A stretch of DNA of 64,000 bases from Gracilinanus agilis (GCF_016433145.1 NC_058134.1:309045891-309109890), one strand, 5' to 3'; positions 27,138 through 63,017 are shown, counted from the stretch's first letter. Notes: generated from the sequence alone by a model not told the origin. Numbers and translations are program-made.

Positions 27138-27527
27138 NNNNNNNNNNNNNNNNNNNNNNNNNNNNNNNNNNNNNNNNNNNNNNNNNNNNNNNNNNNNNNN
27201 NNNNNNNNNNNNNNNNNNNNNNNNNNNNNNNNNNNNNNNNNNNNNNNNNNNNNNNNNNNNNNNNNNNNNNNNNNNNNNNNNNNNNNNNNNNNNNNNNNNN
27301 NNNNNNNNNNNNNNNNNNNNNNNNNNNNNNNNNNNNNNNNNNNNNNNNNNNNNNNNNNNNNNNNNNNNNNNNNNNNNNNNNNNNNNNNNNNNNNNNNNNN
27401 NNNNNNNNNNNNNNNNNNNNNNNNNNNNNNNNNNNNNNNNNNNNNNNNNNNNNNNNNNNNNNNNNNNNNNNNNNNNNNNNNNNNNNNNNNNNNNNNNNNN
27501 NNNNNNNNNNNNNNNNNNNNNNNNNNN
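27138..27527. other. Assembly gap (390 N)
   Basis: Run of N directly after a G-tract. Confidence 0.99.
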
Positions 27528-30938: not shown

Positions 30939-31080
30939 GGGACCACGCTCATCACCAACCTGTCCTCGGTGCTCAAAGACGAAGCCACCTGGGAGCAGCC
31001 TTACCGATTCTACCCCGAGCACTTCCTGGATGCTGAAGGCCGCTTTGTGAAGCCGGAAGCCTTCATGCCTTTCTCTGCGG
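30939..31080 (+). CDS. CYP2D6: CYP2D exon 8 ([15 protein letters not shown]...PEHFLD...PFSAG)
   Basis: 142 nt; AG/GT. Confidence 0.96.
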
Positions 31081-32865
31081 GTACGGGGAGCAGGAGGTGG
31101 GGGAAGGTGGCCTTCAGGGCCTAAAGGCCAGGGGATGAGCTCCTATGGCAACAGAGCATGCGGAGGCAGGAGATTGGTCTTCAAATTCCACCCCTTAACC
31201 CCCTTGGCAGCCAGGCCTGGGACAAGCACCCATTAACTTCTCTGAGCCTCAGTTTTCTCATTTGTGCAATGGGGATGATCACACCTGCCATGCCTGACCC
31301 CACGAGCACTAGAGAAACAGAACCTGGGGCAGAGGGAGCTCTGCACCAAAGATTGGTGCCCATCTTTCCTCCCCGATTTTCGCCACGGGCAAAGCTCAGG
31401 ATGTGGCCCTGGCCGTTAATTAGGGGAGGAGACAGGACGCCCAAGAGGGAAGCCAGAGCCATCACTAAGCATCCTGGCCCCAGGGGCCCTGGAGAGATAG
31501 TCCAACTGGAGCAGTGCAGGGAGTCTGGAAAGGGGGGGACCAGCTCCTCTCTCCTCTTGCCAGACCCCTCTGGCCCCAAGCTCTACTCCCTTGCCCTCTC
31601 CCATGGCCCACCTTCCCCCAAGCCCAGAGGAAAAGTATGCCCTAAAGCTGGAGCAAGCCTCTGCGGGCCCACCCCAGTTAGGGCTTTGGCACAACAAAAG
31701 GGAAGGGTGCTGGCGAGGATTCTGGGGTGGAGGAGCTCAGCCGAAGCTGCAGGGGAAGGAAGGCCTTGAACAAATGGGGAGGATCTAAATGGATGGAGAG
31801 GAGCCTTGATTTAAAGCCAAGAGGGACCTCAGAGTTATTGAGCCAAAGGCCCTCACTTAACAAATGGGGAAACTGAGGCACAGCGGTCAGGTCACTTGCT
31901 CAAGGTAATGAGTGGCCGAGGCAGGATCTGAATCCAAGACTCTGAGTCGGCGAGCCTTGTGCTCTTCCACATTTCCAAGGGTTTCCTAAAGGAATCTCCA
32001 AGCCATAAGCTAAGGGTTTGGATTCACTCTGTCTTTCCTAGCCCAGACTATGAGAGCTGCCTTCATTCTTCCCATTACTCCCTTGCCCTCTGAAGGAGGA
32101 GCCGGAAGGTTCAAGGAGAGGGAGCAAAGACTAGGGAGAAGAGGGAGCTGGGGCGAGGAGAACAGTTCCAAGCATGTTGATCAGGTCCGGTCCTGAGCAG
32201 GACCAGGTGATCTCGGAGGCCCGTCCCTTCTCCCTCCAGTATTGGGGGCTCCCAAAGAGAAAAGTGGGGGAGAAGTAAGGGCGGGCCAGGAAGAGGACGA
32301 GGAGAGATCAGGAAGGCCAGTTCTTAGCCTTAGGTTTCTTGGACCATTGAAAATTTGCCAAGGACGGGGCTATTGGGAAACCCTGGAGCCCACAGCCAGC
32401 CTCCCTCCCTGCCCATTCCATCTGTTTTAAATAGGGTTCACATCACAAAAGCTCCCCTTCTCAACCATCTTTTGGCTTTGTTGTATAAAATGAGGGTTCC
32501 CATAATGCAAAGCAGGTGGGACTGAGACAGGAAGGAGCTTCGAGGCAGTAGGAAGCAGGTGGCTCAGTTTCCTCATCTGAAAATGGGCAAGTTGGACTTG
32601 TTAACAGGCTTCTAATCTTTAATCTCGTGACTTTGGCCCTTGGCTCAGACGCTTGCTAGCAGCGTGGCCTTGGGTTCAGTTTCTCTATCTCTAAAATGAG
32701 GGGGGTTGGACCTGGCTTTTAAGGCCCCTTCTAGCTCTAAATATGTGCTCCCTTGGGAGAACCAGTCAGAGGGGACCTGGGAGGTTGGGACATCTTCTCC
32801 CAGGCAGCGGCAGAGACTCCTGGGCCTCACATTCTCCCACCTTCACGCTTGCCTCTCTCATGCAG

Positions 32866-33044
32866 GCCGCCGGGTGTGCCTAGGGGAGCCACTGGCCAAG
32901 ATGGAACTGTTCCTCTTTTTCACTTGCCTGCTGCAGGATTTCTCCTTTGTCCTGCCTCCGGGGCACTCCAAGCCCAGTGACAAGGCAGAGGTCTCCTTTC
33001 TCTCAGCCCCACAGCCCTTCGAGCTCTGTGCAGTGCCCAGATAG
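32866..33044 (+). CDS. CYP2D6: CYP2D exon 9 (heme ligand, GRRVCLGE...ELCAVPR*)
   Basis: 179 nt including TAG; FxxGxxxCxG motif completed across the exon 8/9 junction. Confidence 0.96.
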
Positions 33045-33193: not shown

Positions 33194-34592
33194 CTACCTT
33201 CTCGGCTCTTGCTGCCTGCCTTGAATCTTGGGGGCGCCGCAGGGAGGAGCGTGGCCAGATCTATGTTACCGGGGAGTGAATGGGATAGTAGAACTGGAAG
33301 GAGCCCTTTGGGAGGATCATTGAGTCCAACCCCCTCTTTCCAGAGAAGGAAACACTGGCCTAGTTAAGTGATTCACCCAAGGCCACACAGCTGGCAAGTA
33401 CCAGGGCTGCCCACAGCTCCTCCAAAGCCTGTGCTCCTCCTACCAAGCTAGGCTGCTTCGCCCTCCTCTGTGCAGTGGCAGGGTTGGGTTAAATGATCTC
33501 TTCTGGAGCTAGGAATCTACTGGTGAACAGGCAGGGGGTGCCGTTCTCCACAGGGCCTTCCCATGGGCCCGTGACAGCAGCCAGCACCACCGTGCCCTGG
33601 AAATCGTCACGCCACCCCCTGGATGGACTTTGTTGGGGAGGAGGCTGATGTGGTGGAATCTATGCCCTGGGAGTGGGGAAGAGCCTTGAGCCAAGGAAGC
33701 CAAAAGCTTTTACAGTAGTCCTGGGAAGGCGCGAGAAAAGGCTTTCCTGGCCTCAGTGGGCAGCAGACATAACAAGAGTGACCTAAGTGCAGAGTGAAGA
33801 CCAAGGAAGAACCCCCCTGGTGGGGACCTAGGACACCCTGAACTGGAGATCGGAGAGGGTCTAAGCCAATCCCCTCAATTTACAGATGAGGAAACTGAGG
33901 TCCAGGGAGGCCGGTTTAGCCGTGTCTTCAGATGAGAGTCAGAATCAGGGGCCTAATCTAAGCAAGTGAGCGTTCCATACCGTACCCAAACCAAAAATCC
34001 TCACCATTAATTAAAAGCGTCTGCTGCGAGTATAGCCACATGGGGGCAGGGCAGGCCCAGGCCTGGGAGGGGGGCTGGGATTCCTAGGCCAGTGTCAGTC
34101 AGGAGGTACCTTTCACCCAGTTGTGGCCAGCAGAGGGCCTTGGACAGCACATCTGGGGAAGGTGGGGCACGGCATGACTCAAAGAAGGCAGAAGAAGAAT
34201 TAGCCCCGCAGGGAGAGGCCTGAAACCACTGACCCAGGAAGTGGCAGAGGCAAGCTCTGAACCCCTCTTCCTAGCTTTGAGGCCGGCTCTCCAGCTCGGC
34301 CGTCAGAATGGCCTCTCGCCTCCAGAGACACAAGTGGCTGAAGCAGAATGGGACACGGGGAGGGCTGCCCCATGGAAGGTTTGTCAAAGGCATTCAAAGC
34401 CTTGGGGAGAGCAGACTTCAGAGATAGAAACTGGGGCGGCTGCTTTGGTCTGGGCTGAAGGTGGGGGCAGGCAAGGGGAAGACCTGTGACCTGGGGCTCT
34501 TTGGTCCTTCTTGCCCCGACGCACCCCCCAGTCAAGTGACAGACTCAGCCAGGTACAGGTGTGCACCCCGACGATGGCATTTCCATTCAGGC

Positions 34593-34598
34593 TTTATT
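34593..34598 (-). terminator. Polyadenylation signal of the unassigned minus-strand gene
   Basis: AATAAA on the minus strand 12 nt after the predicted TAA. Confidence 0.75.
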
Positions 34599-34610
34599 GA
34601 GCGGCCCTGC

Positions 34611-34714
34611 TTAGTGGTTCTGGGTCTTGGGGAGGTTGGGATCGGAGAACCAGTCTACCCAGAACCCTCGGAGGAGCTGTGTGACCCAGCTAGGCCCTGT
34701 GTCCATGGTGGGTT
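34611..34714 (-). CDS. Unassigned 8-exon gene, coding exon 8 (E)PTMDTGPSWVTQLLRGFWVDWFSDPNLPKTQNH*
   Basis: Acceptor cccaccttgccttttcag with CTGAC upstream; phase 1; open to TAA. Confidence 0.78.
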
Positions 34715-34898
34715 CTGAAAAGGCAAGGTGGGAGGCTCGTCAGCCCTGCTTTGGGGAGCCCAGGGAGGGGTCCTAGAGTGCAGCTCATGGGGTGCAGGAA
34801 CCCCCCCCCCGGGTGATGGTAAGGCCCGGGAGCCCTGGCGCCCCTCCCCAGTGCCCAGGAGAACTCATGGCCACGTGGGGTCGGGGTGCTGGCCTTAC

Positions 34899-34941
34899 CG
34901 GCTCCATAGACTGCAGCCTCCTTCTGCACCAGTTTATCTTC
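34899..34941 (-). CDS. Unassigned gene, coding exon 7 (EDKLVQKEAAVYGA)
   Basis: ctctttctttgtcccgcag| ... CCG|gtaagg; 43 nt; phase 0 to 1. Confidence 0.78.
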
Positions 34942-36042
34942 CTGCGGGACAAAGAAAGAGCCGGTTGAGGAAGCCGAGGCCTGGCTGGCCATGAGATTGC
35001 CACGTGGCCTTGGCCAAGTCACTTCCCCCTCCCCCAGGGAGGATGAGCATTGTGGGGGCACAGACAGACCTATCCCACCCTGCCAGCCTCTGCCCAGCCT
35101 GGCAACAATCTGACAAAAGGACATCAGTTGTGCGCTTGCGCTTGCTTTCCACACGTCGCCTCATCCAGGCGTGACTCTTCCCACATTCCACCGTCCTGCC
35201 AGCCCTCTCCAAAGACGCTCCATTTCTCATCTCGGTGCCTTTGCTCGCCTCTGCCTCAGTCTGTCTCTCCAGCTCCCTGGCCTCGGGGCCCAGCACGGGC
35301 CTGGCACGCAGCAGGAGCTGAACACCTTGTGAGGGTTTTCTCTGGGCCTCGCCAGATCTTCTGCTGGCGGGTGTTTTAGCTCCCCACGGCCCCCCCCTGC
35401 CAGTGATGGGGGCTGCCTCTGGGGGAGGTCTGGAACTTGCCAGAGACCTGGGTTCAAGCTCTTGCGCCTCAGCAGCAAGCAGTGTGACCTTAGTCAGGTC
35501 CCTTTCACTGTCTGGGCCTCAGTTTCTCTCGGCCTGAAACGGCCTCAAATCCCTGTGACCCCATGACCTGTGGAGTGTTTCCCCACAAGGCACCCCTCTT
35601 GGTGAGCAGGAAAGCCACCCGTTTCCCTTAAAACATAGAGAAATGGGGGTTCCTGGGCTCTGGGGTGGCGGGCTCCATTGCCGACCTTCATCCATCCATT
35701 CACAGACCCTGGCACAGACCAAGGGAAGCCTCAGCACGCTCCATGGAGGCCATCCTAGGCCCCAGGCCGAGGCCTCCCCAGTTCAGCAGAGCCTTAAGGC
35801 CCGGAGAGCCCCGAGAGGCCGGGGCCCCCTCCATCAGGAGAACTCTCCATGTCCTCCAACACAAACACCCCCCGCAGACGTCCGGTGCCCCCATTTTACA
35901 GCTGAGCACGCTGAGGCCCACAAAGGCATCAACAGGAACATCTGAACCCAGGCCTCCTGGCTCCAAATTCTCAGTGTGCCCTTTGTGTCTGCAGGAAGCC
36001 CTCCGGAGCCCCTGCTGCCTGCTGCCTGGGCTTCTCCCTCAC

Positions 36043-36162
36043 CTCCGGGGCTGGGCTCGGCTCCTCCTCTTTGCCCTTGAAGTCCTCCGGGTCCTTCGGG
36101 TCCTTTGGGTCCTCAGGAGCAGCCATCATTGGGCTCATGACTTTGGGAGTCCTCTGGGAAGG
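36043..36162 (-). CDS. Unassigned gene, coding exon 6 (PSQRTPKVMSPMMAAPEDPKDPKDPEDFKGKEEEPSPAPE)
   Basis: ctgacttcctctcag| ... GAG|gtgagg; 120 nt; phase 0/0. Confidence 0.78.
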
Positions 36163-36313
36163 CTGAGAGGAAGTCAGACAAGCCCTGAGGCCAGGCCAAG
36201 GTCTGAGGGCACCCCTCCCCCCCGCCCTGCCCTGAAAGGGAGTGAGTCTCCTGTCACCAGATGTGTCTCCGGGCGGCCGGAGGAGCATCGAGGAGCCTTA
36301 GGGTCCCCCTTAC

Positions 36314-36352
36314 CAGCTTCGCTCGCCATTTAAGGTTCTCGGTTCTGTGGTT
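36314..36352 (-). CDS. Unassigned gene, coding exon 5 (NHRTENLKWRAKL)
   Basis: ctgaccctttctgttctggctctccacag| ... CTG|gtaagg; 39 nt; phase 0/0. Confidence 0.75.
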
Positions 36353-36454
36353 CTGTGGAGAGCCAGAACAGAAAGGGTCAGAGAAGGGGGACCCCCCATG
36401 CACCCCCAAATCAAGCCCTCAGCCCTCCCCAGCGCCCCCCCTCCAGGCTCTTAC

Positions 36455-36517
36455 CCAGGTCACTGGATAGCACTTATCTTCAGGCCCCCACACAGGCCTC
36501 AAGGTCTCCCCTATGCA
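36455..36517 (-). CDS. Unassigned gene, coding exon 4 (CIGETLRPVWGPEDKCYPVTW)
   Basis: cttcccttctcttccccccag| ... TGG|gtaaga; 63 nt; only phase 0 is open. Confidence 0.75.
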
Positions 36518-36873
36518 CTGGGGGGAAGAGAAGGGAAGTAGGCCCAGGGCTGCAGGCGCCCCTTCCCTCCCAGAGGGTGGCCCCTTCCCCGCATCTCCAC
36601 AACCACCATGAGGGGCTTCCAAAAGAAATGTTTAAAAGGGGCCTTCAAGTCCAGCCTAAGATATTTCCTGGCTGAGTGTCCCTAGGCAAGTCACTTGCCC
36701 CCCACTACTTCACCCTGACTGCTCTCCTGCAACACAGACATGGCGGAGGGGCTGGACACTTCCTACGTGACCAAAGTCACTTTGCCTCAGTTTCTTCCTC
36801 TGTCTAATGGGGTAGTCACTGGGGCTGGTACCTGCCTTGCCTGACTGCCCGAGCAGAGGGACGCAGGCCCTAC

Positions 36874-36950
36874 CTGTGTGTCCATTAGGGTCCCGTGCTT
36901 ATCCTCAGAGGCTTTCTCGGGTCTTCCGTGGAAGAAATAATAGACCATGC
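36874..36950 (-). CDS. Unassigned gene, coding exon 3 ((G)MVYYFFHGRPEKASEDKHGTLMDTQ)
   Basis: ctgacccgcttttctccctctgccctggctgcag| ... CAG|gtaggg; 77 nt; phase 1 to 0. Confidence 0.78.
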
Positions 36951-37369
36951 CTGCAGCCAGGGCAGAGGGAGAAAAGCGGGTCAGGCCCTGGCATCTCGGG
37001 GCAGCTGGGAGGGAGCAAGAGGCCTCAGAGTCTGTCCCTGAGGCCCAGCGAGAGCCCCAGAGGAGGGAAAACCCTTGTCTCCTGCTGCCAAGCCTGCAGG
37101 CTCGCATTCGTGGCCAGGGCCTGCTGCGTGCCAGCTGTGCCCATCAAGGCCCACTGCCCGGGAGACAAAGCCAAGAGCCAGCCCCTTCGTGCCCTCCCAA
37201 AGCTTCCACTGTGGCAGGTGCTCTGGCCTGGACAAGGATGGGGCCGGCCCTGCGGCCACAACTGGAGCTCAAGGACCTCCTGGAGAGCCCATGCTTACGT
37301 TTTCAGGGGGTGCCTGATGCAAATCGGGTCTGGATCGATCGTGTGTTTATTTCTAGACTTTCCAATCAG

Positions 37370-37503
37370 AGGTCTTGGGTTCAGATCCAGCCTCAGACAC
37401 TTCCTAGCTGTGGGACCCTGGGCCAGTGCCTTAATTTAACCCCCTTGCCTGGCCCTTACCTCTCTGCTGCCCTGGAGCCCGTAGTCGCATGGAAGGTAAG
37501 AGG
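37370..37503 (+). mobile_element. SINE1_Mdo-like SINE
   Basis: CCTCAGACACTTCCTAGCTG core; GGAAGGTAAG tail. Confidence 0.75.
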
Positions 37504-37848
37504 GTCACGGAGGTATTGGGGGGGGGATGTTAAAATAGGAACAATGAAATATTGGTAGTGGAACGAGCGCCGAGTCGGAGGCAGAAGAGCTGCATTCAGC
37601 CTCAGCCCTGCCAATATTCGCTCCTGGAATGTCCTTAGACAAACATCTTGAGCCTCAGTCTCCCCCTCTGTGAAGTCACGTCGCTTCACCCCAAGGCCTT
37701 GGGGGCTCTCACGGCTCTACAGCCCCCCAGATGGGTCACCTTCCTGCTGGCCAGGACCACCCCCCATAGGACCACTCCAGGACCGGCCGAGCCACAGCAA
37801 GCCCCTGGTCCGGGCACCTGAGGGCGAGGGCCTTGGCGGCTTCCTCAC

Positions 37849-37892
37849 CTGCCAGTATAAAAAGCTGCATCACATACAGGGACTTGGAAACT
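37849..37892 (-). CDS. Unassigned gene, coding exon 2 ((R)VSKSLYVMQLFILA(G)), first half of predicted TM helix
   Basis: ctgaccgtcctttcttttccag| ... CAG|gtgagg; 44 nt; phase 2 to 1. Confidence 0.78.
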
Positions 37893-39133
37893 CTGGAAAA
37901 GAAAGGACGGTCAGTGGAGTCTGGCCACTCCCAAACCAGAACTGCCCGAAGTGGGGACACGGCCTCTTCACTTAGGGGACAAGGGACTTGCCCAAGGTCA
38001 CACAGGTCCCCGCGTCCTGCACTCTTTGGCTGGATCCCCCAAATCACCCCCCAGGGAGGGATGCAGATGACCCCAGTGGTGGGAGGAGTCAGAGCTCTGG
38101 AGACCCCCCCCCAAAAGTATCTGGGGGGGAATTCATAGCCCTGGGGCGTCCCCCCTCCCCTGGCCCATCTGGCTCTGCCCAGGTCCTCATGCTCCCATGC
38201 AGCCCAGCCTCAGCACTTTGAGTTTGCTTTCTTTCTTCCTGTCCCTTCCATCTTAGAATTTCTCAGTCTTGTGGATCAGTTCCGTGGCAGAAGAGTTGTC
38301 AGGGCTGGGCAGTGGGGGGTGCCCGAGGCCAGACTGGAACCCAGAACCTCTCCTCTCCAGGCCTGATTCTCCATCCACTGAGCCACCGAGCTGCCCCCTT
38401 GCTTCAAGGTTCCCAGATCCAGATGCTGCCTCTGGCAGGAAGTCTGCCCTGATTCTTCAGGTCCCTCCCCACCCCCTCCCAAGGGGCCCCATGAAGCACT
38501 TTGGTGTGTAGAATGGGAGCTCCGAGAGGGAACAGCATGAAAGATGGCCCCAGCCATGGGACCTCAGTCTGGTCCCCTCCTCATCTCCCCCTCGGTAAAG
38601 CTTGTGGCTTTGGACTTGGGCTTTCCATGATGCTGTCCTGGTCACGGGGCCAGGCATACAGGAAGTGGTGATTTGCCTCTCGTCCGGGACAGGGCTGTGC
38701 TGGCCCCTACCTTGGGCAGCTAGGCATGGTCTTCTCTTGCACCCCGGCCCTGCCTCACCGCTGTCCAGGAACTTGCTAGACCCAGGCCCCCTCCCCCTTG
38801 GGCTTAGCAGAGGCCTTAACCCGGGCCTCCTCTTCACGGCCTTAGACCAGACCTTTGAGCTCATCTCACCCAACCTCTTCTTTAACAGATGAGGAAGCTG
38901 GTTTTCTTAAGGTTACACAGTAAGTGGCAGATTTAAACCCAGACCCTGAGTTAGTCTTTTCCATGTACCTCCTCACCCTGCGCAACATCAGGCTGGGGGA
39001 GCCCATTCAAGGAAGTTCTGCCATCTTCCTCATCACACCCACTCCCACTTTGTGAGCCTCTAGGCCCACAGGCGGGTAGAGTGTACACACACACCCCCAT
39101 GCCCACGCCTGGAAGGTGGCACCCATACTCTAC

Positions 39134-39165
39134 CTTTCTCTCGGGCAACACAAAATCAGCACCAT
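39134..39165 (-). CDS. Unassigned gene, coding exon 1 (MVLILCCPRE(R)); exon begins at 39172
   Basis: ctgacatctctcctttcctccctag|ACTGAAG-ATG-G (A at -3, G at +4); AAG|gtagag donor; phase 2. Confidence 0.72.
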
Positions 39166-39309
39166 CTTCAGTCTAGGGAGGAAAGGAGAGATGTCAGGGC
39201 CTCTCAGGAGATCCGGGGTCTGGGCGCAGGACCTCCAGATTCAGAGCAATGAGAGCCCAGGCTAGTCCAGCATCTAAGCACCCCTTTACACTTAAAAATC
39301 ACCATGGAA

Positions 39310-39478
39310 GGGACAGCTGGGGGCCTAGAGTCAAATCTGGCCTCAGTCACTTCCTAGCTGGGTGACCCTGGGCAAGTCACTTAATCCCCATAGCCTAGCC
39401 CTCACCCTCACCTTTGTTCTGCCTTGGAGCCAGTAATCCACAGGATTGATTCTAAGGCATATGGTAAGGATTTAAAAA
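39310..39478 (+). mobile_element. SINE1_Mdo-like SINE
   Basis: Core plus GATTGATTCTAAGGC...GGTAAGGATTTAAAAA tail. Confidence 0.8.
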
Positions 39479-40911
39479 GGAAAAAGAGTGGAAACTTGCC
39501 GTTCTGGGGAATGACATCACGGGGCATACCCTCATTGGGAAGATGAGTAAACCGGGGCCTGGGAAGGGACTTGTCTGGGTAGAAGGGCTCCAGACGCCAC
39601 TGGCCACCCTGTCTCCGTTTCAGGACGTCTGAGCAGAGTCACCTGTCCTCAAGGTTCTCTCTGAGCACCCCCCACCCCGAGGGCTGGCTAACGCCAGGAT
39701 GCAAAGGGCTGGGGGCCCTGTTGGGACAGAAATCTCTCCTTCCTCCCCATTAGGGCTTGGCCTTTGGGGGCTTCTCACCCTGGGCTGGGATCTCAGTAAC
39801 CTCAGCAGCTGCAGACTATCCCTCAATCATGTCAGCTCCGGCACTGACGGGCCGCCTGGCTCCTTGTCTCTTCTCTGGCTCTGGTCCTAGGCTTGAGCAC
39901 TGGCGCGGGACAGGACCATATCCAAACGCAAGCCCCCCAGATGAGAGATCCTCGCGGCCAGCTGTCCACTGGCCCGGCCTTTGGGGTCTGCTCGGTGCTG
40001 CTGCCTTCCCAGGAAGGGGCCTCGGGCCTGAGTGTGACATCACATTAAGGGAGCCTTTATGACGGGGCAGGATCATCACCGGCCTAGGACAGGGGGCACC
40101 CCAATGGGGAAGTGGCCAAAGTGCCAGGGGCACCCGTCTGGATCACAGGGAGTCAGGGGGCTCTGTGATAAACATGGGCCATACACAGGCGGCAGCGTCC
40201 CAGCCCACGAGGGGCCCCCAGGCTAGGGGGAGACGTGTGCAGGCAGCTCTGTGCAAACTAGGCACAGCAAGAGGAATTGGAGTGCTATGGGCCGAGGAAA
40301 CGGGCTGGGCCTGAGAGAAGGGCACCCAGCCCCTCAGCCCCTACCCTGGTTGGTCCCAGGGGAACAACGTTCCAATTCCCCGTGTTTCAATCACACCCAG
40401 AATAAATTGGACCCCGAGATTGAGAGCCAGAAGCTGGGGTCTTGGAGGTTAGTGGGTCCAGCTCCCTCATTTTACAGACACAAGCTGAGGCCCTGGGAAG
40501 ATCCTAGTCAGAGCTGGAAGGGACCATCTGAGAGACCATCCATTTTTCAGATGAAGAAACTGAGGTTCAAAGAAATTAAGTGACTTGGTCAAGGTCACAC
40601 AACTAGTAGAGATCTGCTCCTGAGCCAGAGTCCTTTTCACTGAACCAAGCTGGGTCCTTAATGTGTCCAAAGATATACCAGCAGAGAAGTAGCCAAGTCA
40701 GAATTTGAACCCAGGTTCTGAGGCTCCAAATCCACATTCTCCAAAGCAGTCTCCAAGTGAGTATAGGCCAGAGGCCAAAGCCAGTAGGTCTGGGAGTCCC
40801 AAGAAGACAAGCTCCAAGAGCCTGAGACAGAAACCAGAGGCTAAGAAAGGATGCAGAGCAAGCAGGAAAGCTGGGGAAGTTACCAGGTGAATTTATTCTA
40901 TCATTTAGTTG

Positions 40912-47364: not shown

Positions 47365-47502
47365 CTAGTCGTCGTCGTCGTCATCCTCGGGCACAAAGAT
47401 GTCGTGCTCCTCCAGCAGGGCGGCAAAGTTCTTGCTGATGAGCGTCCCCACGTACAGGAAGGGGATCACAATGGAAAAGACCCGCAGGAGGCCGAAGGAC
47501 AT
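47365..47502 (-). CDS. SMDT1: SMDT1/EMRE exon 2 (MSFGLLRVFSIVIPFLYVGTLISKNFAALLEEHDIFVPEDDDDDD*)
   Basis: Characteristic TM helix and poly-Asp tail; donor gtaagc 3 nt after the stop. Confidence 0.97.
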   Translation of the reverse strand: MSFGLLRVFSIVIPFLYVGTLISKNFAALLEEHDIFVPEDDDDDD

Positions 47503-47626
47503 CTGGGGGGGGTTAGAGAGGGCGCACCGCGGGGCAGCCAAGAGGCCAGTCAGCACCCAGAGCCAGGACGGAGCTCGGCCCGGCAGTGACCCCTCCCCCC
47601 ACGACCCCGCCCCGCCCCTCACTCAC

Positions 47627-56742: not shown

Positions 56743-57467
56743 GTACGGGCCGGGGCCGTGGTCTGGGGGGGCTGGTGTGGCCTCTTCAGGAGGAACGCCG
56801 GCTCGTCCCGAGGCAGGAACTGAACCCGGGTCTCCCCGCTGCCGGGTCTCCCTTCAACGCTCGTACTTGGGGTTCACCACTTGAGGGCCTGTTTCCAGCT
56901 TCATCCTCCAGCTGAAACCTCGGGCCCCAGAGTCCCACGGCCTGAGGGTCTCTCCGGTCCCAATTCTCCATCCCCCTCCCCTCCCGGGTGGGTGTGCAGG
57001 ACGGGGGTGGCTGCTGTCCGGCACCCCGTCCCGGGCCTTCTTCTGCCCTTTCTTGCCCTCCCTCTCTGAGGAGCCTCCTCCACTCCCCTGGGTTGACCCC
57101 TCTCCCGGCAGTGCCCAGACCCCCATCTCCAGCCCCAGTTTGCCCCCCCGCGCTTCCACCCTGGAGACACAAAGGGTCGCCTCCTTCCTTCCAAACTTCC
57201 CTCTGGGGGGCTGCTGGGTCCAGGGGAAATTCAAGCCTCCCTGAGCAGCGAGTGCCCGGGCCCCCCAACACAGGCGCCGGGGGACCCCCGGGGGCCACCG
57301 GCATTCCAAGGACGAGCTCAAGTAAGGGTTAAGGCCCCAGGGCTGAGACTCTTGGGGATCCCTCCCTCCATCGGGGGACCCTCGCAGGGTGTGTTTCTTG
57401 GGGCATCACCCAGAAGACCCCAGAGTCCAGGCCCGACTCAGTGGGCGCCCCCTTCCTCATCCCTCAG

Positions 57468-57665
57468 CTACTTATAGGGAACTACGGGCTGAGCTTTGAG
57501 CAGGCCAAGGCCCAGATGGCCCTGTGGACGGTGCTGGCGGCTCCGCTCTTCATGTCCACCGACCTCCGCACCATCTCGCCGCAGAACGTGGACATTCTGC
57601 AGAACAAACTCATGATCCGCATCAACCAGGACCCCCTGGGCATCCAGGGCCGCAGAGTCCTCCAG
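57468..57665 (+). CDS. NAGA: NAGA exon (LLIGNYGLS...NQDPLGIQG)
   Basis: 198 nt. Confidence 0.97.
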
Positions 57666-57767
57666 GTAGGAGGCGGGGGGCCCAGGCTGGAGAGGCCCTC
57701 GGGGTGCTCCCGGCCCTGACCCAGGCAGGCCGGACCGAGCGCCTTCTGGCTTCTCTGTGCCCCTCAG

Positions 57768-62517: not shown

Positions 62518-63017
62518 NNNNNNNNNNNNNNNNNNNNNNNNNNNNNNNNNNNNNNNNNNNNNNNNNNNNNNNNNNNNNNNNNNNNNNNNNNNNNNNNNNN
62601 NNNNNNNNNNNNNNNNNNNNNNNNNNNNNNNNNNNNNNNNNNNNNNNNNNNNNNNNNNNNNNNNNNNNNNNNNNNNNNNNNNNNNNNNNNNNNNNNNNNN
62701 NNNNNNNNNNNNNNNNNNNNNNNNNNNNNNNNNNNNNNNNNNNNNNNNNNNNNNNNNNNNNNNNNNNNNNNNNNNNNNNNNNNNNNNNNNNNNNNNNNNN
62801 NNNNNNNNNNNNNNNNNNNNNNNNNNNNNNNNNNNNNNNNNNNNNNNNNNNNNNNNNNNNNNNNNNNNNNNNNNNNNNNNNNNNNNNNNNNNNNNNNNNN
62901 NNNNNNNNNNNNNNNNNNNNNNNNNNNNNNNNNNNNNNNNNNNNNNNNNNNNNNNNNNNNNNNNNNNNNNNNNNNNNNNNNNNNNNNNNNNNNNNNNNNN
63001 NNNNNNNNNNNNNNNNN
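62518..63017. other. Assembly gap (500 N)
   Basis: Run of N. Confidence 0.99.

What the first reader, a model, noticed from the sequence alone, without database searches (positions are those of the whole stretch)
34593..39172. Unrecognised 8-exon protein-coding gene on the minus strand between CYP2D and NDUFA6
Seen in sequence: exons 39134-39172, 37849-37892, 36874-36950, 36455-36517, 36314-36352, 36043-36162, 34899-34941 and 34611-34714 all have long pyrimidine tracts plus AG. All seven introns start with good GT donors. Six of eight acceptors have a CTGAC branch point just upstream. All seven intron phases match (2,1,0,0,0,0,1), giving a stop-free 522-nt ORF from a strong-Kozak ATG (39165) to TAA (34611), with AATAAA 12 nt later. 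Product, 173 aa: MVLILCCPRERVSKSLYVMQLFILAGMVYYFFHGRPEKASEDKHGTLMDTQCIGETLRPVWGPEDKCYPVTWNHRTENLKWRAKLPSQRTPKVMSPMMAAPEDPKDPKDPEDFKGKEEEPSPAPEEDKLVQKEAAVYGAEPTMDTGPSWVTQLLRGFWVDWFSDPNLPKTQNH. Random phase agreement would be about (1/3)^7, though I chose the sites by eye. I know of no protein-coding gene at this position in human or mouse, and I do not recognise the family.
Basis: seen in the sequence. Interest (0 to 1): 0.92.

Follow-up and report, generated by a model that had tools for sequence, protein, structure and literature searches.

The report
Unnamed conserved mammalian membrane-protein gene
The eight exons are a real gene for a 173-residue single-pass membrane protein kept between NDUFA6 and CYP2D from marsupials to dogs, cattle, bats and elephants; it has no name, no known family and no study, and no primate, mouse or rat counterpart appeared in the database listings.

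Summary
In detail: all eight exons, 14 GT/AG sites, the 522-nt ORF, the Kozak ATG, the TAA and the AATAAA are as described. The gene is real. A search with the last-exon peptide found a Tasmanian devil protein (G3WHN0). Profile searches from it found about 130 proteins, all called "uncharacterized protein LOC...", in koala, devil and more than 60 eutherian species. No primate, mouse/rat-type rodent, monotreme or non-mammal was listed. In koala and devil the gene lies between NDUFA6 and a P450 gene; in dog and degu a P450 gene lies downstream. All four share the window's 8-exon, same-phase structure. A codon model gives omega 0.35, which rejects neutrality (p about 3e-16). A family HMM matches the window protein end to end (175 bits). 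So it is not unrecognised by databases, but it is unnamed, has no Pfam or PDB relative, and has no literature. A conserved upstream block ending in a conserved donor (last base 39779) is probably a non-coding first exon. The product has an N-terminal membrane helix, a disordered middle with a nearly invariant RPxWG...DKCYP motif, and a C-terminal Trp-rich amphipathic helix. Flanking charges favour type II topology. Its function is unknown. The other two scan notes cover this same stretch.

The parts
39779..40096 (-). Conserved promoter region plus putative non-coding first exon ('exon 0'). The exon's last base is 39779 and its donor is GTGAGA. The transcription start site was not determined.
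   Evidence: 78% identity to koala over 335 nt, and the block also aligns to devil, while the flanking sequence does not align; the conserved donor is CAGG|GTGAG in all three marsupials. Splicing to 39172 puts an in-frame TGA 24 nt before the ATG. CpG o/e is 0.39, so this is not a CpG island. The exon is inferred; no RNA evidence was available.
39134..39172 (-). Exon 1 (first coding exon). ATG at 39165. Encodes the short N-terminal tail with Cys-Cys and R-E-R.
   Evidence: Orthologous exon in koala and devil with AG/GT. Its CDS part is 32 nt in all five species.
37849..37892 (-). Exon 2 (44 nt). Encodes the first half of the membrane helix.
   Evidence: 44 nt in window, koala, devil, dog and degu.
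36874..36950 (-). Exon 3 (77 nt). Encodes the second half of the membrane helix and a variable juxtamembrane stretch.
   Evidence: 77 nt in four species and 71 nt in degu. The six-frame family-HMM scan hits it.
36455..36517 (-). Exon 4 (63 nt). Encodes the most conserved motif, GETLRPVWG..DKCYPVT, with the invariant Cys.
   Evidence: 16 of 21 residues identical to dog; best six-frame HMM hit (44.5 bits); invariant columns R58, P59, W61, G62, K66, C67, Y68.
36314..36352 (-). Exon 5 (39 nt, phase 0-0). Encodes a basic, poorly conserved linker.
   Evidence: 39 nt in all five species; 3 of 13 residues identical to dog.
36043..36162 (-). Exon 6 (120 nt, phase 0-0). Encodes an acidic, Pro-rich disordered linker of variable length. 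It is skipped in some predicted isoforms of other species.
   Evidence: lengths are 120/108/111/156/84 nt in window/koala/devil/dog/degu, all multiples of 3. It is absent from devil G3WHN0 and bear isoform X7. AF2 pLDDT is below 50 here.
34899..34941 (-). Exon 7 (43 nt). Encodes the conserved K..AVY stretch.
   Evidence: 43 nt in all five species.
34611..34714 (-). Exon 8, coding part plus the TAA stop. Encodes the C-terminal Trp-rich amphipathic helix and the PKTQNH tail.
   Evidence: this 33-aa peptide alone found the devil protein (E 5.7e-09, 72% identity). AF2 helix at 145-157; highest hydrophobic moment in the protein.
34593..34598 (-). AATAAA polyadenylation signal, 12 nt after the stop codon.
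   Evidence: Alignment to koala and devil continues through the 3' UTR to about 34537.

Best explanation
Shown: this is the orthologue, in an unidentified marsupial, of an unnamed protein-coding gene shared by marsupials and placental mammals. In koala and devil the gene lies between NDUFA6 (head-to-head) and the last CYP2D-type P450 gene (tail-to-tail); in dog and degu the P450 gene downstream was seen. It has one probable non-coding 5' exon and eight coding exons, and it encodes a 173-residue protein under purifying selection.

Inferred: the product is a single-pass membrane protein with no globular domain. Its parts, in order:
- A 15-residue N-terminal tail with conserved Cys (a candidate palmitoylation site) and R-E-R.
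- An 18-residue Tyr-rich membrane helix.
- A disordered chain carrying the nearly invariant RPxWG...DKCYP motif with one invariant cysteine.
- A variable acidic linker (exon 6, optional in other species' isoforms).
- A C-terminal Trp/Leu amphipathic helix.

The flanking charges point to type II orientation: N-terminus in the cytosol and C-terminal chain in the lumen or outside. It most likely acts as a small adaptor or regulator that binds a partner through the motif and the terminal helix, rather than as an enzyme.

The confidence of 0.85 is for the identity (a real, conserved, coding orthologue). The type II topology is about 0.55. The adaptor role is a guess.
For: Gene model:
- All sites and the ORF were verified.

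Orthologues:
- The exon-8 peptide hit devil G3WHN0.
- Profile searches gave 136 and 128 hits, all 'uncharacterized protein', in koala, devil and many eutherian orders.

Synteny:
- In koala and devil the gene lies between a Complex1_LYR gene (NDUFA6) and a p450 gene.
- In dog and degu a p450 gene lies downstream and convergent.
- In the window, p450, SMDT1 (Pfam DDDD) and NAGA (Melibiase_2) are confirmed by Pfam. NDUFA6 is identified by motif and blastn.

Architecture:
- All eight exons were found in order in koala and devil.
- Threading gives the same exon count and phases in five species, with all introns GT-AG and all length differences multiples of 3.

Selection:
- Pairwise dN/dS is 0.37-0.43 among the marsupials.
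- The codon model gives omega 0.354, with an LRT against omega=1 of 66.7 and p 3e-16.

Membership:
- A family HMM matches the spliced window protein end to end (175 bits, E 9e-56). There is a single copy in the window.
- Exons are islands of conservation; introns align only at repeats.

Protein:
- AF2 gives only helices 8-33 and 145-157 and no order elsewhere.
- The best 19-residue Kyte-Doolittle hydrophobicity (KD19) segment is residues 16-34.
- The N flank is net +1.7 and the C flank net -2.0, with N more positive than C in 25 of 26 orthologues.
- At least one Cys at positions 6/7 in nearly all orthologues, and Cys67 is invariant.
- Language-model look-alikes are N-terminal parts of type II Golgi enzymes. 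Scores are 0.5-0.6, so this is a lead only.

Expression:
- The pig orthologue LOC110260835 is listed among genes differentially expressed in kidney and liver (PMC10578457).
Against: - No RNA or peptide evidence for this species could be consulted.
- Exon 0 and the transcription start are inferred from conservation only.
- Constraint is moderate (omega 0.35), and pairwise codon-position skew is not significant on its own (p about 0.2).
- The membrane segment is only moderately hydrophobic (KD19 mean 1.42).
- The long C-terminal chain has no conserved N-glycosylation sequon and no cysteine pair. That would also fit a cytosolic chain.
- Rabbit, hare, pika and Damaraland mole-rat models have degraded C-termini, so the gene is dispensable in some lineages.
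- The function is not addressed by any data.
Confidence: 0.85

Rival explanations
1. It is the same real gene, but the protein is oriented the other way (N-terminus out, C-terminal chain in the cytosol), or it is anchored by its N-terminal helix in the mitochondrial outer membrane. In either case the charged disordered chain and the amphipathic helix work in the cytosol.
For: The membrane segment is only moderately hydrophobic (KD19 1.42). The C-terminal 140 residues are Lys/Glu/Pro-rich and disordered. Nearly all of 28 orthologues lack N-glycosylation sequons and have only one conserved Cys. The neighbouring NDUFA6 and SMDT1 are mitochondrial, which is own knowledge and a weak argument.
Against: The charge difference across the helix favours N-in in 25 of 26 orthologues. 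The conserved Cys next to the helix on the N side fits cytosolic palmitoylation. Language-model look-alikes are type II proteins, though the scores are weak. The gene has its own non-CpG promoter block about 2.5 kb from the NDUFA6 CpG island, so co-regulation is not implied.
Confidence: 0.3
2. It is the membrane-bound precursor of a secreted or shed peptide, released from the luminal chain at basic sites.
For: Eutherian orthologues have an RRR.K..KK cluster just after the conserved motif. The N- and C-terminal parts of the chain are conserved while the middle is not.
Against: The basic cluster is not conserved as a dibasic site in the window protein, which has N-L-K-W where koala and devil have N-R-K-W. 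No cleavable signal peptide is evident. No peptide family matches it.
Confidence: 0.08
3. It is a spliced non-coding RNA (as its positional counterpart in human is annotated) and the ORF is not translated or not functional.
For: Human has a lncRNA, NDUFA6-DT, in this slot (own knowledge; scan note s1-153870). No protein-level data exist. Constraint is moderate.
Against: The ORF is intact with identical phases in all five species threaded, including marsupials and eutherians. All exon length changes are multiples of 3. Omega is 0.35 and neutrality is rejected at p 3e-16. Protein motifs are invariant across 28 orthologues.
Confidence: 0.03
4. It is a chance chain of splice-like sites picked by eye, with no gene there.
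For: A naive chain search builds long stop-free chains of good-looking sites on both strands of this GC-rich window.
Against: Every exon has an orthologue in the same order in koala and devil. The spliced product matches a family HMM at 175 bits. Introns do not align but exons do.
Confidence: 0.01

Closest known systems
Predicted 'uncharacterized proteins': LOC144454902 (koala), G3WHN0 / ACOB8E_002292 (Tasmanian devil), LOC111097639 (dog), LOC103674067 (polar bear), G3UGM8 (elephant), and about 130 others
   Same: These are orthologues. They share the genomic slot and the eight coding exons and phases. They also share the membrane helix, the RPxWG..DKCYP motif and the C-terminal WV.QLL..LW.DWF..PKTQNH helix.
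   Different: The window protein is a distinct sequence: about 65-70% identical to koala and devil and about 45% to dog (from the identity counts). Its exon 6 is longer than in koala and devil and shorter than in dog. None of these entries has a name, a family or any experimental characterisation.
Human lncRNA NDUFA6-DT (formerly NDUFA6-AS1)
   Same: By own knowledge it occupies the same interval and orientation: divergent from NDUFA6 and running toward CYP2D6. No primate protein of this family is listed.
   Different: It is annotated as non-coding. No sequence comparison was made here, so descent from this gene is a hypothesis only. The papers found treat it purely as a cancer biomarker. It is not in the lncRNA-fossil list of PMC5577775.
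Cytoplasmic tail-transmembrane-stem region of type II Golgi enzymes (for example alpha-mannosidase IC, B4GALT1, Fringe, MGAT2)
   Same: Both have a short basic N-terminal tail, a single short membrane helix and a long disordered stem. These are the language-model feature look-alikes.
   Different: There is no catalytic domain and no sequence homology. The look-alike scores are far below the level the tool calls meaningful. This is a resemblance of architecture only.
Small integral membrane proteins / microproteins (SMIM-type)
   Same: Small, single-pass, intrinsically disordered outside the helix, and overlooked by curated annotation.
   Different: At 173 residues with eight coding exons it is larger than typical microproteins. 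It is not related in sequence to any named SMIM, since no Pfam family matched.

Membership tests
Unnamed therian family (koala LOC144454902 / devil G3WHN0 / dog LOC111097639) | Full-length sequence similarity to the family profile | tested here: met
   An HMM built from 28 orthologues matched the spliced window protein at 175.3 bits, E 9e-56, profile positions 1-198 against residues 1-173. The exon-8 peptide alone hit the devil protein at E 5.7e-09.
Unnamed therian family (koala LOC144454902 / devil G3WHN0 / dog LOC111097639) | Position between NDUFA6 (divergent) and a CYP2D-type P450 gene (convergent) | tested here: met
   Koala and devil loci have Complex1_LYR upstream on the opposite strand and p450 downstream on the opposite strand. 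Dog and degu have p450 downstream. The window has p450 exons at 30939-33041 (+) and NDUFA6 at 42.7-44.2 kb (+).
Unnamed therian family (koala LOC144454902 / devil G3WHN0 / dog LOC111097639) | Eight coding exons with the same intron phases | tested here: met
   CDS exon lengths are 32/44/77/63/39/120/43/104 in the window, 32/44/77/63/39/108/43/104 in koala and 32/44/77/66/39/156/43/122 in dog. All introns are GT-AG.
Unnamed therian family (koala LOC144454902 / devil G3WHN0 / dog LOC111097639) | Conserved motifs: LFILAG.VYY helix, RPxWG..DKCYP, and the C-terminal W-rich helix with PKTQNH | tested here: met
   All are present in the window protein. The invariant columns are listed.
Protein-coding gene (as opposed to lncRNA) | Purifying selection on the encoded protein, with the ORF kept open across species | tested here: met
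   Omega is 0.354, and the LRT against omega=1 is 66.7 with p 3e-16 on five species. ORFs are intact and indels are multiples of 3.
Protein-coding gene (as opposed to lncRNA) | Transcript and protein observed in this species | not testable with these tools
   No RNA-seq or proteomics is accessible. The only indirect datum is that the pig orthologue is listed as differentially expressed in kidney and liver.
Type II (signal-anchor) single-pass membrane protein | A single N-proximal hydrophobic helix and no other membrane segment | tested here: met
   AF2 helix at 8-33, with pLDDT up to 90. The KD19 maximum is at residues 16-34 with mean 1.42, which is moderate, and there is no second peak.
Type II (signal-anchor) single-pass membrane protein | The more positive flank is on the N-terminal (cytosolic) side | tested here: met
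   Net charge is +1.7 on the N flank and -2.0 on the C flank over 15-residue flanks. The N flank is more positive in 25 of 26 orthologues.
Type II (signal-anchor) single-pass membrane protein | Luminal or extracellular C-terminus shown experimentally, or implied by glycosylation or disulfides | tested here: inconclusive
   There is no conserved sequon and only one invariant Cys in the C-terminal chain. Experimental topology is not testable here.
Orthologue/ancestor of the human lncRNA NDUFA6-DT | Sequence similarity of exons and shared splice sites with the human transcript | not tested
   No human or primate DNA was compared. The only support is the positional argument (own knowledge) and the absence of primate proteins among listed hits.
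Any curated protein family (Pfam) or solved structure (PDB) | A significant profile match | tested here: not met
   Pfam gave nothing on exon peptides or on four full-length orthologues at E up to 10. A PDB profile search gave nothing at E up to 10.

The most novel reading that the evidence does not exclude
The family is an old therian gene, present before the marsupial-placental split. It has stayed unstudied because it was lost as a coding gene in primates and in mouse/rat-type rodents. The human lncRNA NDUFA6-DT, in the same slot and orientation, would then be its decayed remnant: a protein-gene-to-lncRNA conversion. The degraded C-termini in lagomorph and mole-rat models would be further, independent steps of the same decay.
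Probability: 0.35. Interest if true: 0.6.

Novelty: new member of a known kind. Interest (0 to 1): 0.45.

Why it matters
This is a clean example of a conserved mammalian protein-coding gene that curated biology has never looked at. The likely reason is that the two reference species, human and mouse, do not carry it as a coding gene.

For annotation: among marsupials only koala and devil models were in the protein collection. Other marsupial annotations, apparently including this genome's, therefore probably miss it, and the model given here could be transferred.

For biology: the family offers two short, deeply conserved elements with no known counterpart, the RPxWG..DKCYP motif and a Trp-rich terminal helix. 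If the link to NDUFA6-DT holds, it would also give an evolutionary origin for a human lncRNA that is widely used as a cancer marker.

Tried and rejected
- **Whole-protein database search.** The spliced 173-aa protein has no reference and was not typed in, so it was never sent whole to any database tool. Searches used exon pieces and then the orthologues those found. The whole protein was compared only locally, against the family HMM.
- **Pfam, Rfam and PDB.** Pfam on exon peptides and on full-length orthologues gave nothing. Rfam on the window gave nothing. A PDB profile search gave nothing.
- **P0001.** This 621-aa hit with 9 stretches was the top hit of the peptide search. It was rejected as a low-complexity repeat match (PRQWFSSPQ-type repeats).
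- **Fold search.** AF2 gave no globular fold (pLDDT 55), so fold searches were not run, since they would be meaningless.
- **In-window significance test.** A naive splice-chain search was uninformative because long chains arise on both strands.
- **Codon-position skew.** Pairwise skew of substitutions was not significant. The codon-model test replaced it.
- **Literature.** Twelve LOC identifiers gave only one incidental mention, for pig. The NDUFA6-DT papers say nothing about origin or coding. The lncRNA-fossil paper does not list this locus.
- **A 54-nt block at 33857-33910.** It is 91% identical to koala, but it turned out to be a shared MIR-like repeat core.
- **Resemblance to SMIM20/phoenixin.** A recalled similarity of the C-terminus (W.DP) was dropped because those residues are not conserved among the orthologues.

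Full report
**Observation**

- Every exon is preceded by AG, and exons 1-7 are followed by GT.
- The joined sequence is 529 nt.
- The ORF runs 522 nt from the ATG at 39165 to the TAA at 34611-34613 and gives the stated 173 residues.

CTGAC sits 15-34 nt upstream of six of the eight acceptors. AATAAA is at 34593-34598, 12 nt after the stop. The start has A at -3 and G at +4. With approximate splice matrices, the acceptors rank in the 97th-99.8th percentile and the donors in the 94th-99.7th percentile of all AG/GT sites on that strand.

A simple dynamic-programming search joined sites of similar quality into stop-free chains. It produced chains of 12-20 introns on both strands of this GC-rich window, running across several real genes. 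The decision therefore rests on comparative evidence.

**Context**

- Pfam places the last two exons of a P450 gene at 30939-31082 and about 32862-33041 on the plus strand.
- SMDT1 (Pfam DDDD) is at 47368-47622 on the minus strand.
- NAGA (Melibiase_2) is at 57333-57716 on the plus strand.
- NDUFA6 is recognisable by its LYR motif and C-terminus at 42.7-44.2 kb on the plus strand. It aligns to the Complex1_LYR genes of koala and devil.

The candidate is thus tail-to-tail with the P450 gene and head-to-head with NDUFA6. MIR-like and SINE-like repeats typical of marsupials fill its introns.

**Finding relatives**

The spliced protein has no reference, so I searched its pieces, as the operators prescribe. 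Pfam found nothing on the exon peptides.

The 33-residue exon-8 peptide was scored against 1.84 billion representatives. It hit a 133-aa protein at its C-terminus (E 5.7e-09, 72% identity). This is UniRef G3WHN0, an 'Uncharacterized protein' of Sarcophilus harrisii. Its sequence matches the window protein from the first residue but lacks exon 6.

Searching with it, and then with two profiles, gave 10, 136 and 128 hits. Every named hit is an 'uncharacterized' or 'hypothetical' protein. The species listed were:
- Marsupials: koala (LOC144454902) and devil.
- Carnivores, whales, ruminants, pigs, camels, hippo and horses.
- Many bats, plus hedgehog and pangolin.
- Elephant, sloth and tamandua.
- Squirrel, degu, chinchilla, mole-rats and kangaroo rats.
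- Rabbit, hare and pika.

No primate, no mouse/rat-type rodent, no monotreme and no non-mammal is among the 120 rows listed in either profile search. Even a profile built from rodents and lagomorphs did not bring them up. A further 16 and 8 weaker hits were not displayed, so this absence is strong but not absolute.

**Orthology**

- In koala and devil the gene lies between a Complex1_LYR gene on the opposite strand and a p450 gene on the opposite strand.
- In dog and degu a p450 gene follows it convergently.
- All eight window exons find their counterparts, in order, in koala and devil.

I threaded the annotated proteins onto their loci. This gives the same eight coding exons and the same phases in window, koala, devil, dog and degu. 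Exons 1, 2, 5 and 7 have identical lengths in all five species. All other length differences are multiples of three. Every intron is GT-AG.

Across the whole NDUFA6-P450 interval, the window aligns to koala and devil only in four kinds of place:
- the exons of this gene;
- the NDUFA6 exons;
- repeats;
- two upstream blocks.

A profile HMM of 28 orthologues matches the spliced window protein end to end (175 bits, E 9e-56). In a six-frame scan of the window it finds nothing except this gene's own exons.

**Coding status**

- Pairwise Nei-Gojobori dN/dS is 0.43 (window-koala), 0.38 (window-devil) and 0.37 (koala-devil and dog-degu).
- A Goldman-Yang codon model on the five sequences gives omega 0.354. 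Fixing omega at 1 costs 33 log-likelihood units (LRT 66.7, p 3e-16).

Constraint is uneven. Between the window and dog, exon 4 keeps 16 of 21 residues and exon 8 keeps 18 of 34. Exons 5 and 6 keep about 20%. The lncRNA and chance readings are therefore rejected.

**Gene model refinement**

Exon 1 has a strong acceptor, so a further 5' exon is expected.

A block at 39768-40096 is 78% identical to koala and also aligns to devil. It ends in a donor conserved in all three species, CAGG|GTGAG, with its last exon base at 39779. Spliced to 39172, it places an in-frame TGA 24 nt before the ATG, which fixes the start codon for this isoform.

The block is not a CpG island (o/e 0.39). It lies about 2.5 kb from the NDUFA6 CpG island (o/e 0.86). 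The gene therefore probably has its own, possibly tissue-restricted, promoter. This exon is inferred, not shown.

Predicted isoforms in other species skip exon 6 (devil G3WHN0, bear X7) or exon 4 (koala X2). Both exons are phase 0-0.

**The protein**

AlphaFold2 with a 28-sequence alignment, koala first, gives mean pLDDT 55. It predicts only two helices, at 8-33 and 145-157, and the rest is disordered.

The hydrophobic maximum is at residues 16-34 with a KD mean of 1.42, which is moderate. The largest helical hydrophobic moment is at 144-157. Invariant or nearly invariant positions cluster in three places:
- the helix;
- the motif RPxWG..DKCYP, with a single invariant Cys;
- the C-terminal helix.

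The N-terminal flank of the helix carries net +1.7 and the C-terminal flank -2.0. The N flank is the more positive in 25 of 26 orthologues. By the positive-inside / charge-difference rule (established knowledge) this favours type II orientation. One or two Cys next to the helix on the N side are nearly universal and are candidate palmitoylation sites.

Language-model look-alikes of the koala and dog proteins are N-terminal pieces of type II Golgi enzymes and a viral type II glycoprotein. Their scores are too low to be more than a lead.

Against a luminal chain: there are no conserved sequons and no cysteine pair. My estimates:
- type II: about 0.55;
- the opposite or a mitochondrial-anchor arrangement: about 0.3;
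- a peptide-precursor reading: below 0.1, because the basic cluster of eutherians is not kept in the window protein.

**Comparison with what is known**

There is no Pfam family, no solved structure and no paper on any of twelve LOC identifiers. The one exception is a table listing the pig gene among transcripts changed in kidney and liver after ASFV infection.

The closest known things are the automatic gene models themselves. By position and orientation, the human lncRNA NDUFA6-DT is also close (own knowledge; also the scan's note s1-153870). I could not compare sequences with human or other primates. The lncRNA is not among the fossils listed in PMC5577775. Rabbit, hare, pika and Fukomys models have C-termini in which the hydrophobic face of the helix is destroyed or missing. 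This suggests repeated relaxation within Euarchontoglires and fits the decay idea without proving it.

**Verdict**

The finding is a correct, by-eye gene prediction of an orthologue of an existing but unnamed and unstudied therian gene family.
- It is not new to sequence databases, so novelty is 'new member of a known kind'.
- It is probably missing from most marsupial annotations, since only koala and devil models were found.
- Interest is moderate (0.45). It could rise if the loss in primates and muroid rodents and the link to NDUFA6-DT are confirmed.

The other two notes of this scan (s1-153870, s1-153963) concern this same stretch, not other DNA.

Noticed in passing
window 39768-40096 (-): A block conserved with koala (78% over 335 nt) and devil, ending in a conserved GT donor (last exon base 39779). 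It is probably the promoter and non-coding first exon of the gene. It contains short upstream ORFs and conserved motifs such as GTGATGTCACACT and GCGTTTGGATATGG.
   Followed up: partly
window 40500-40781: A second upstream block aligning to koala (66% over 295 nt) and partly to devil, between this gene and NDUFA6. Its nature is unknown; it may be an enhancer or an alternative first exon.
   Followed up: no
window, both strands (whole): In this GC-rich, stop-poor sequence a naive search chains high-scoring GT/AG sites into stop-free 'genes' of 12-20 introns on either strand. Phase agreement picked by eye is therefore not evidence of a gene in such regions.
   Followed up: yes
P0107 (rabbit), P0111 (hare), P0118 (pika), P0119 (Fukomys): The C-terminal amphipathic helix is degraded or missing in lagomorph and Damaraland mole-rat models, while squirrel, degu and chinchilla keep it. 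This is possible lineage-specific decay of the gene within Glires.
   Followed up: partly
P0002, P0008, P0007 (devil, bear, koala isoforms): Predicted isoforms skip exon 6 (the acidic linker) or exon 4 (the most conserved motif). Both exons are phase 0-0, so skipping keeps the frame.
   Followed up: no
window 33857-33910, 37369-37437, 39331-39402: Short stretches with 80-92% identity to several places in the koala and devil loci. These are MIR-like / marsupial SINE cores (CCTCAGTTTCCTCATCTGTAAA type), not functional elements of the gene.
   Followed up: yes
window 27138-27527 and 62518-63017: Two runs of N (390 and 500 bases). The first lies upstream of the P450 exons seen at 30.9-33.0 kb.
   Followed up: no
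window 1-27000: No P450 signature motifs were found outside 30.9-33.0 kb, so only one P450 3' end is visible in the window. The content of the first 27 kb was not examined.
   Followed up: no
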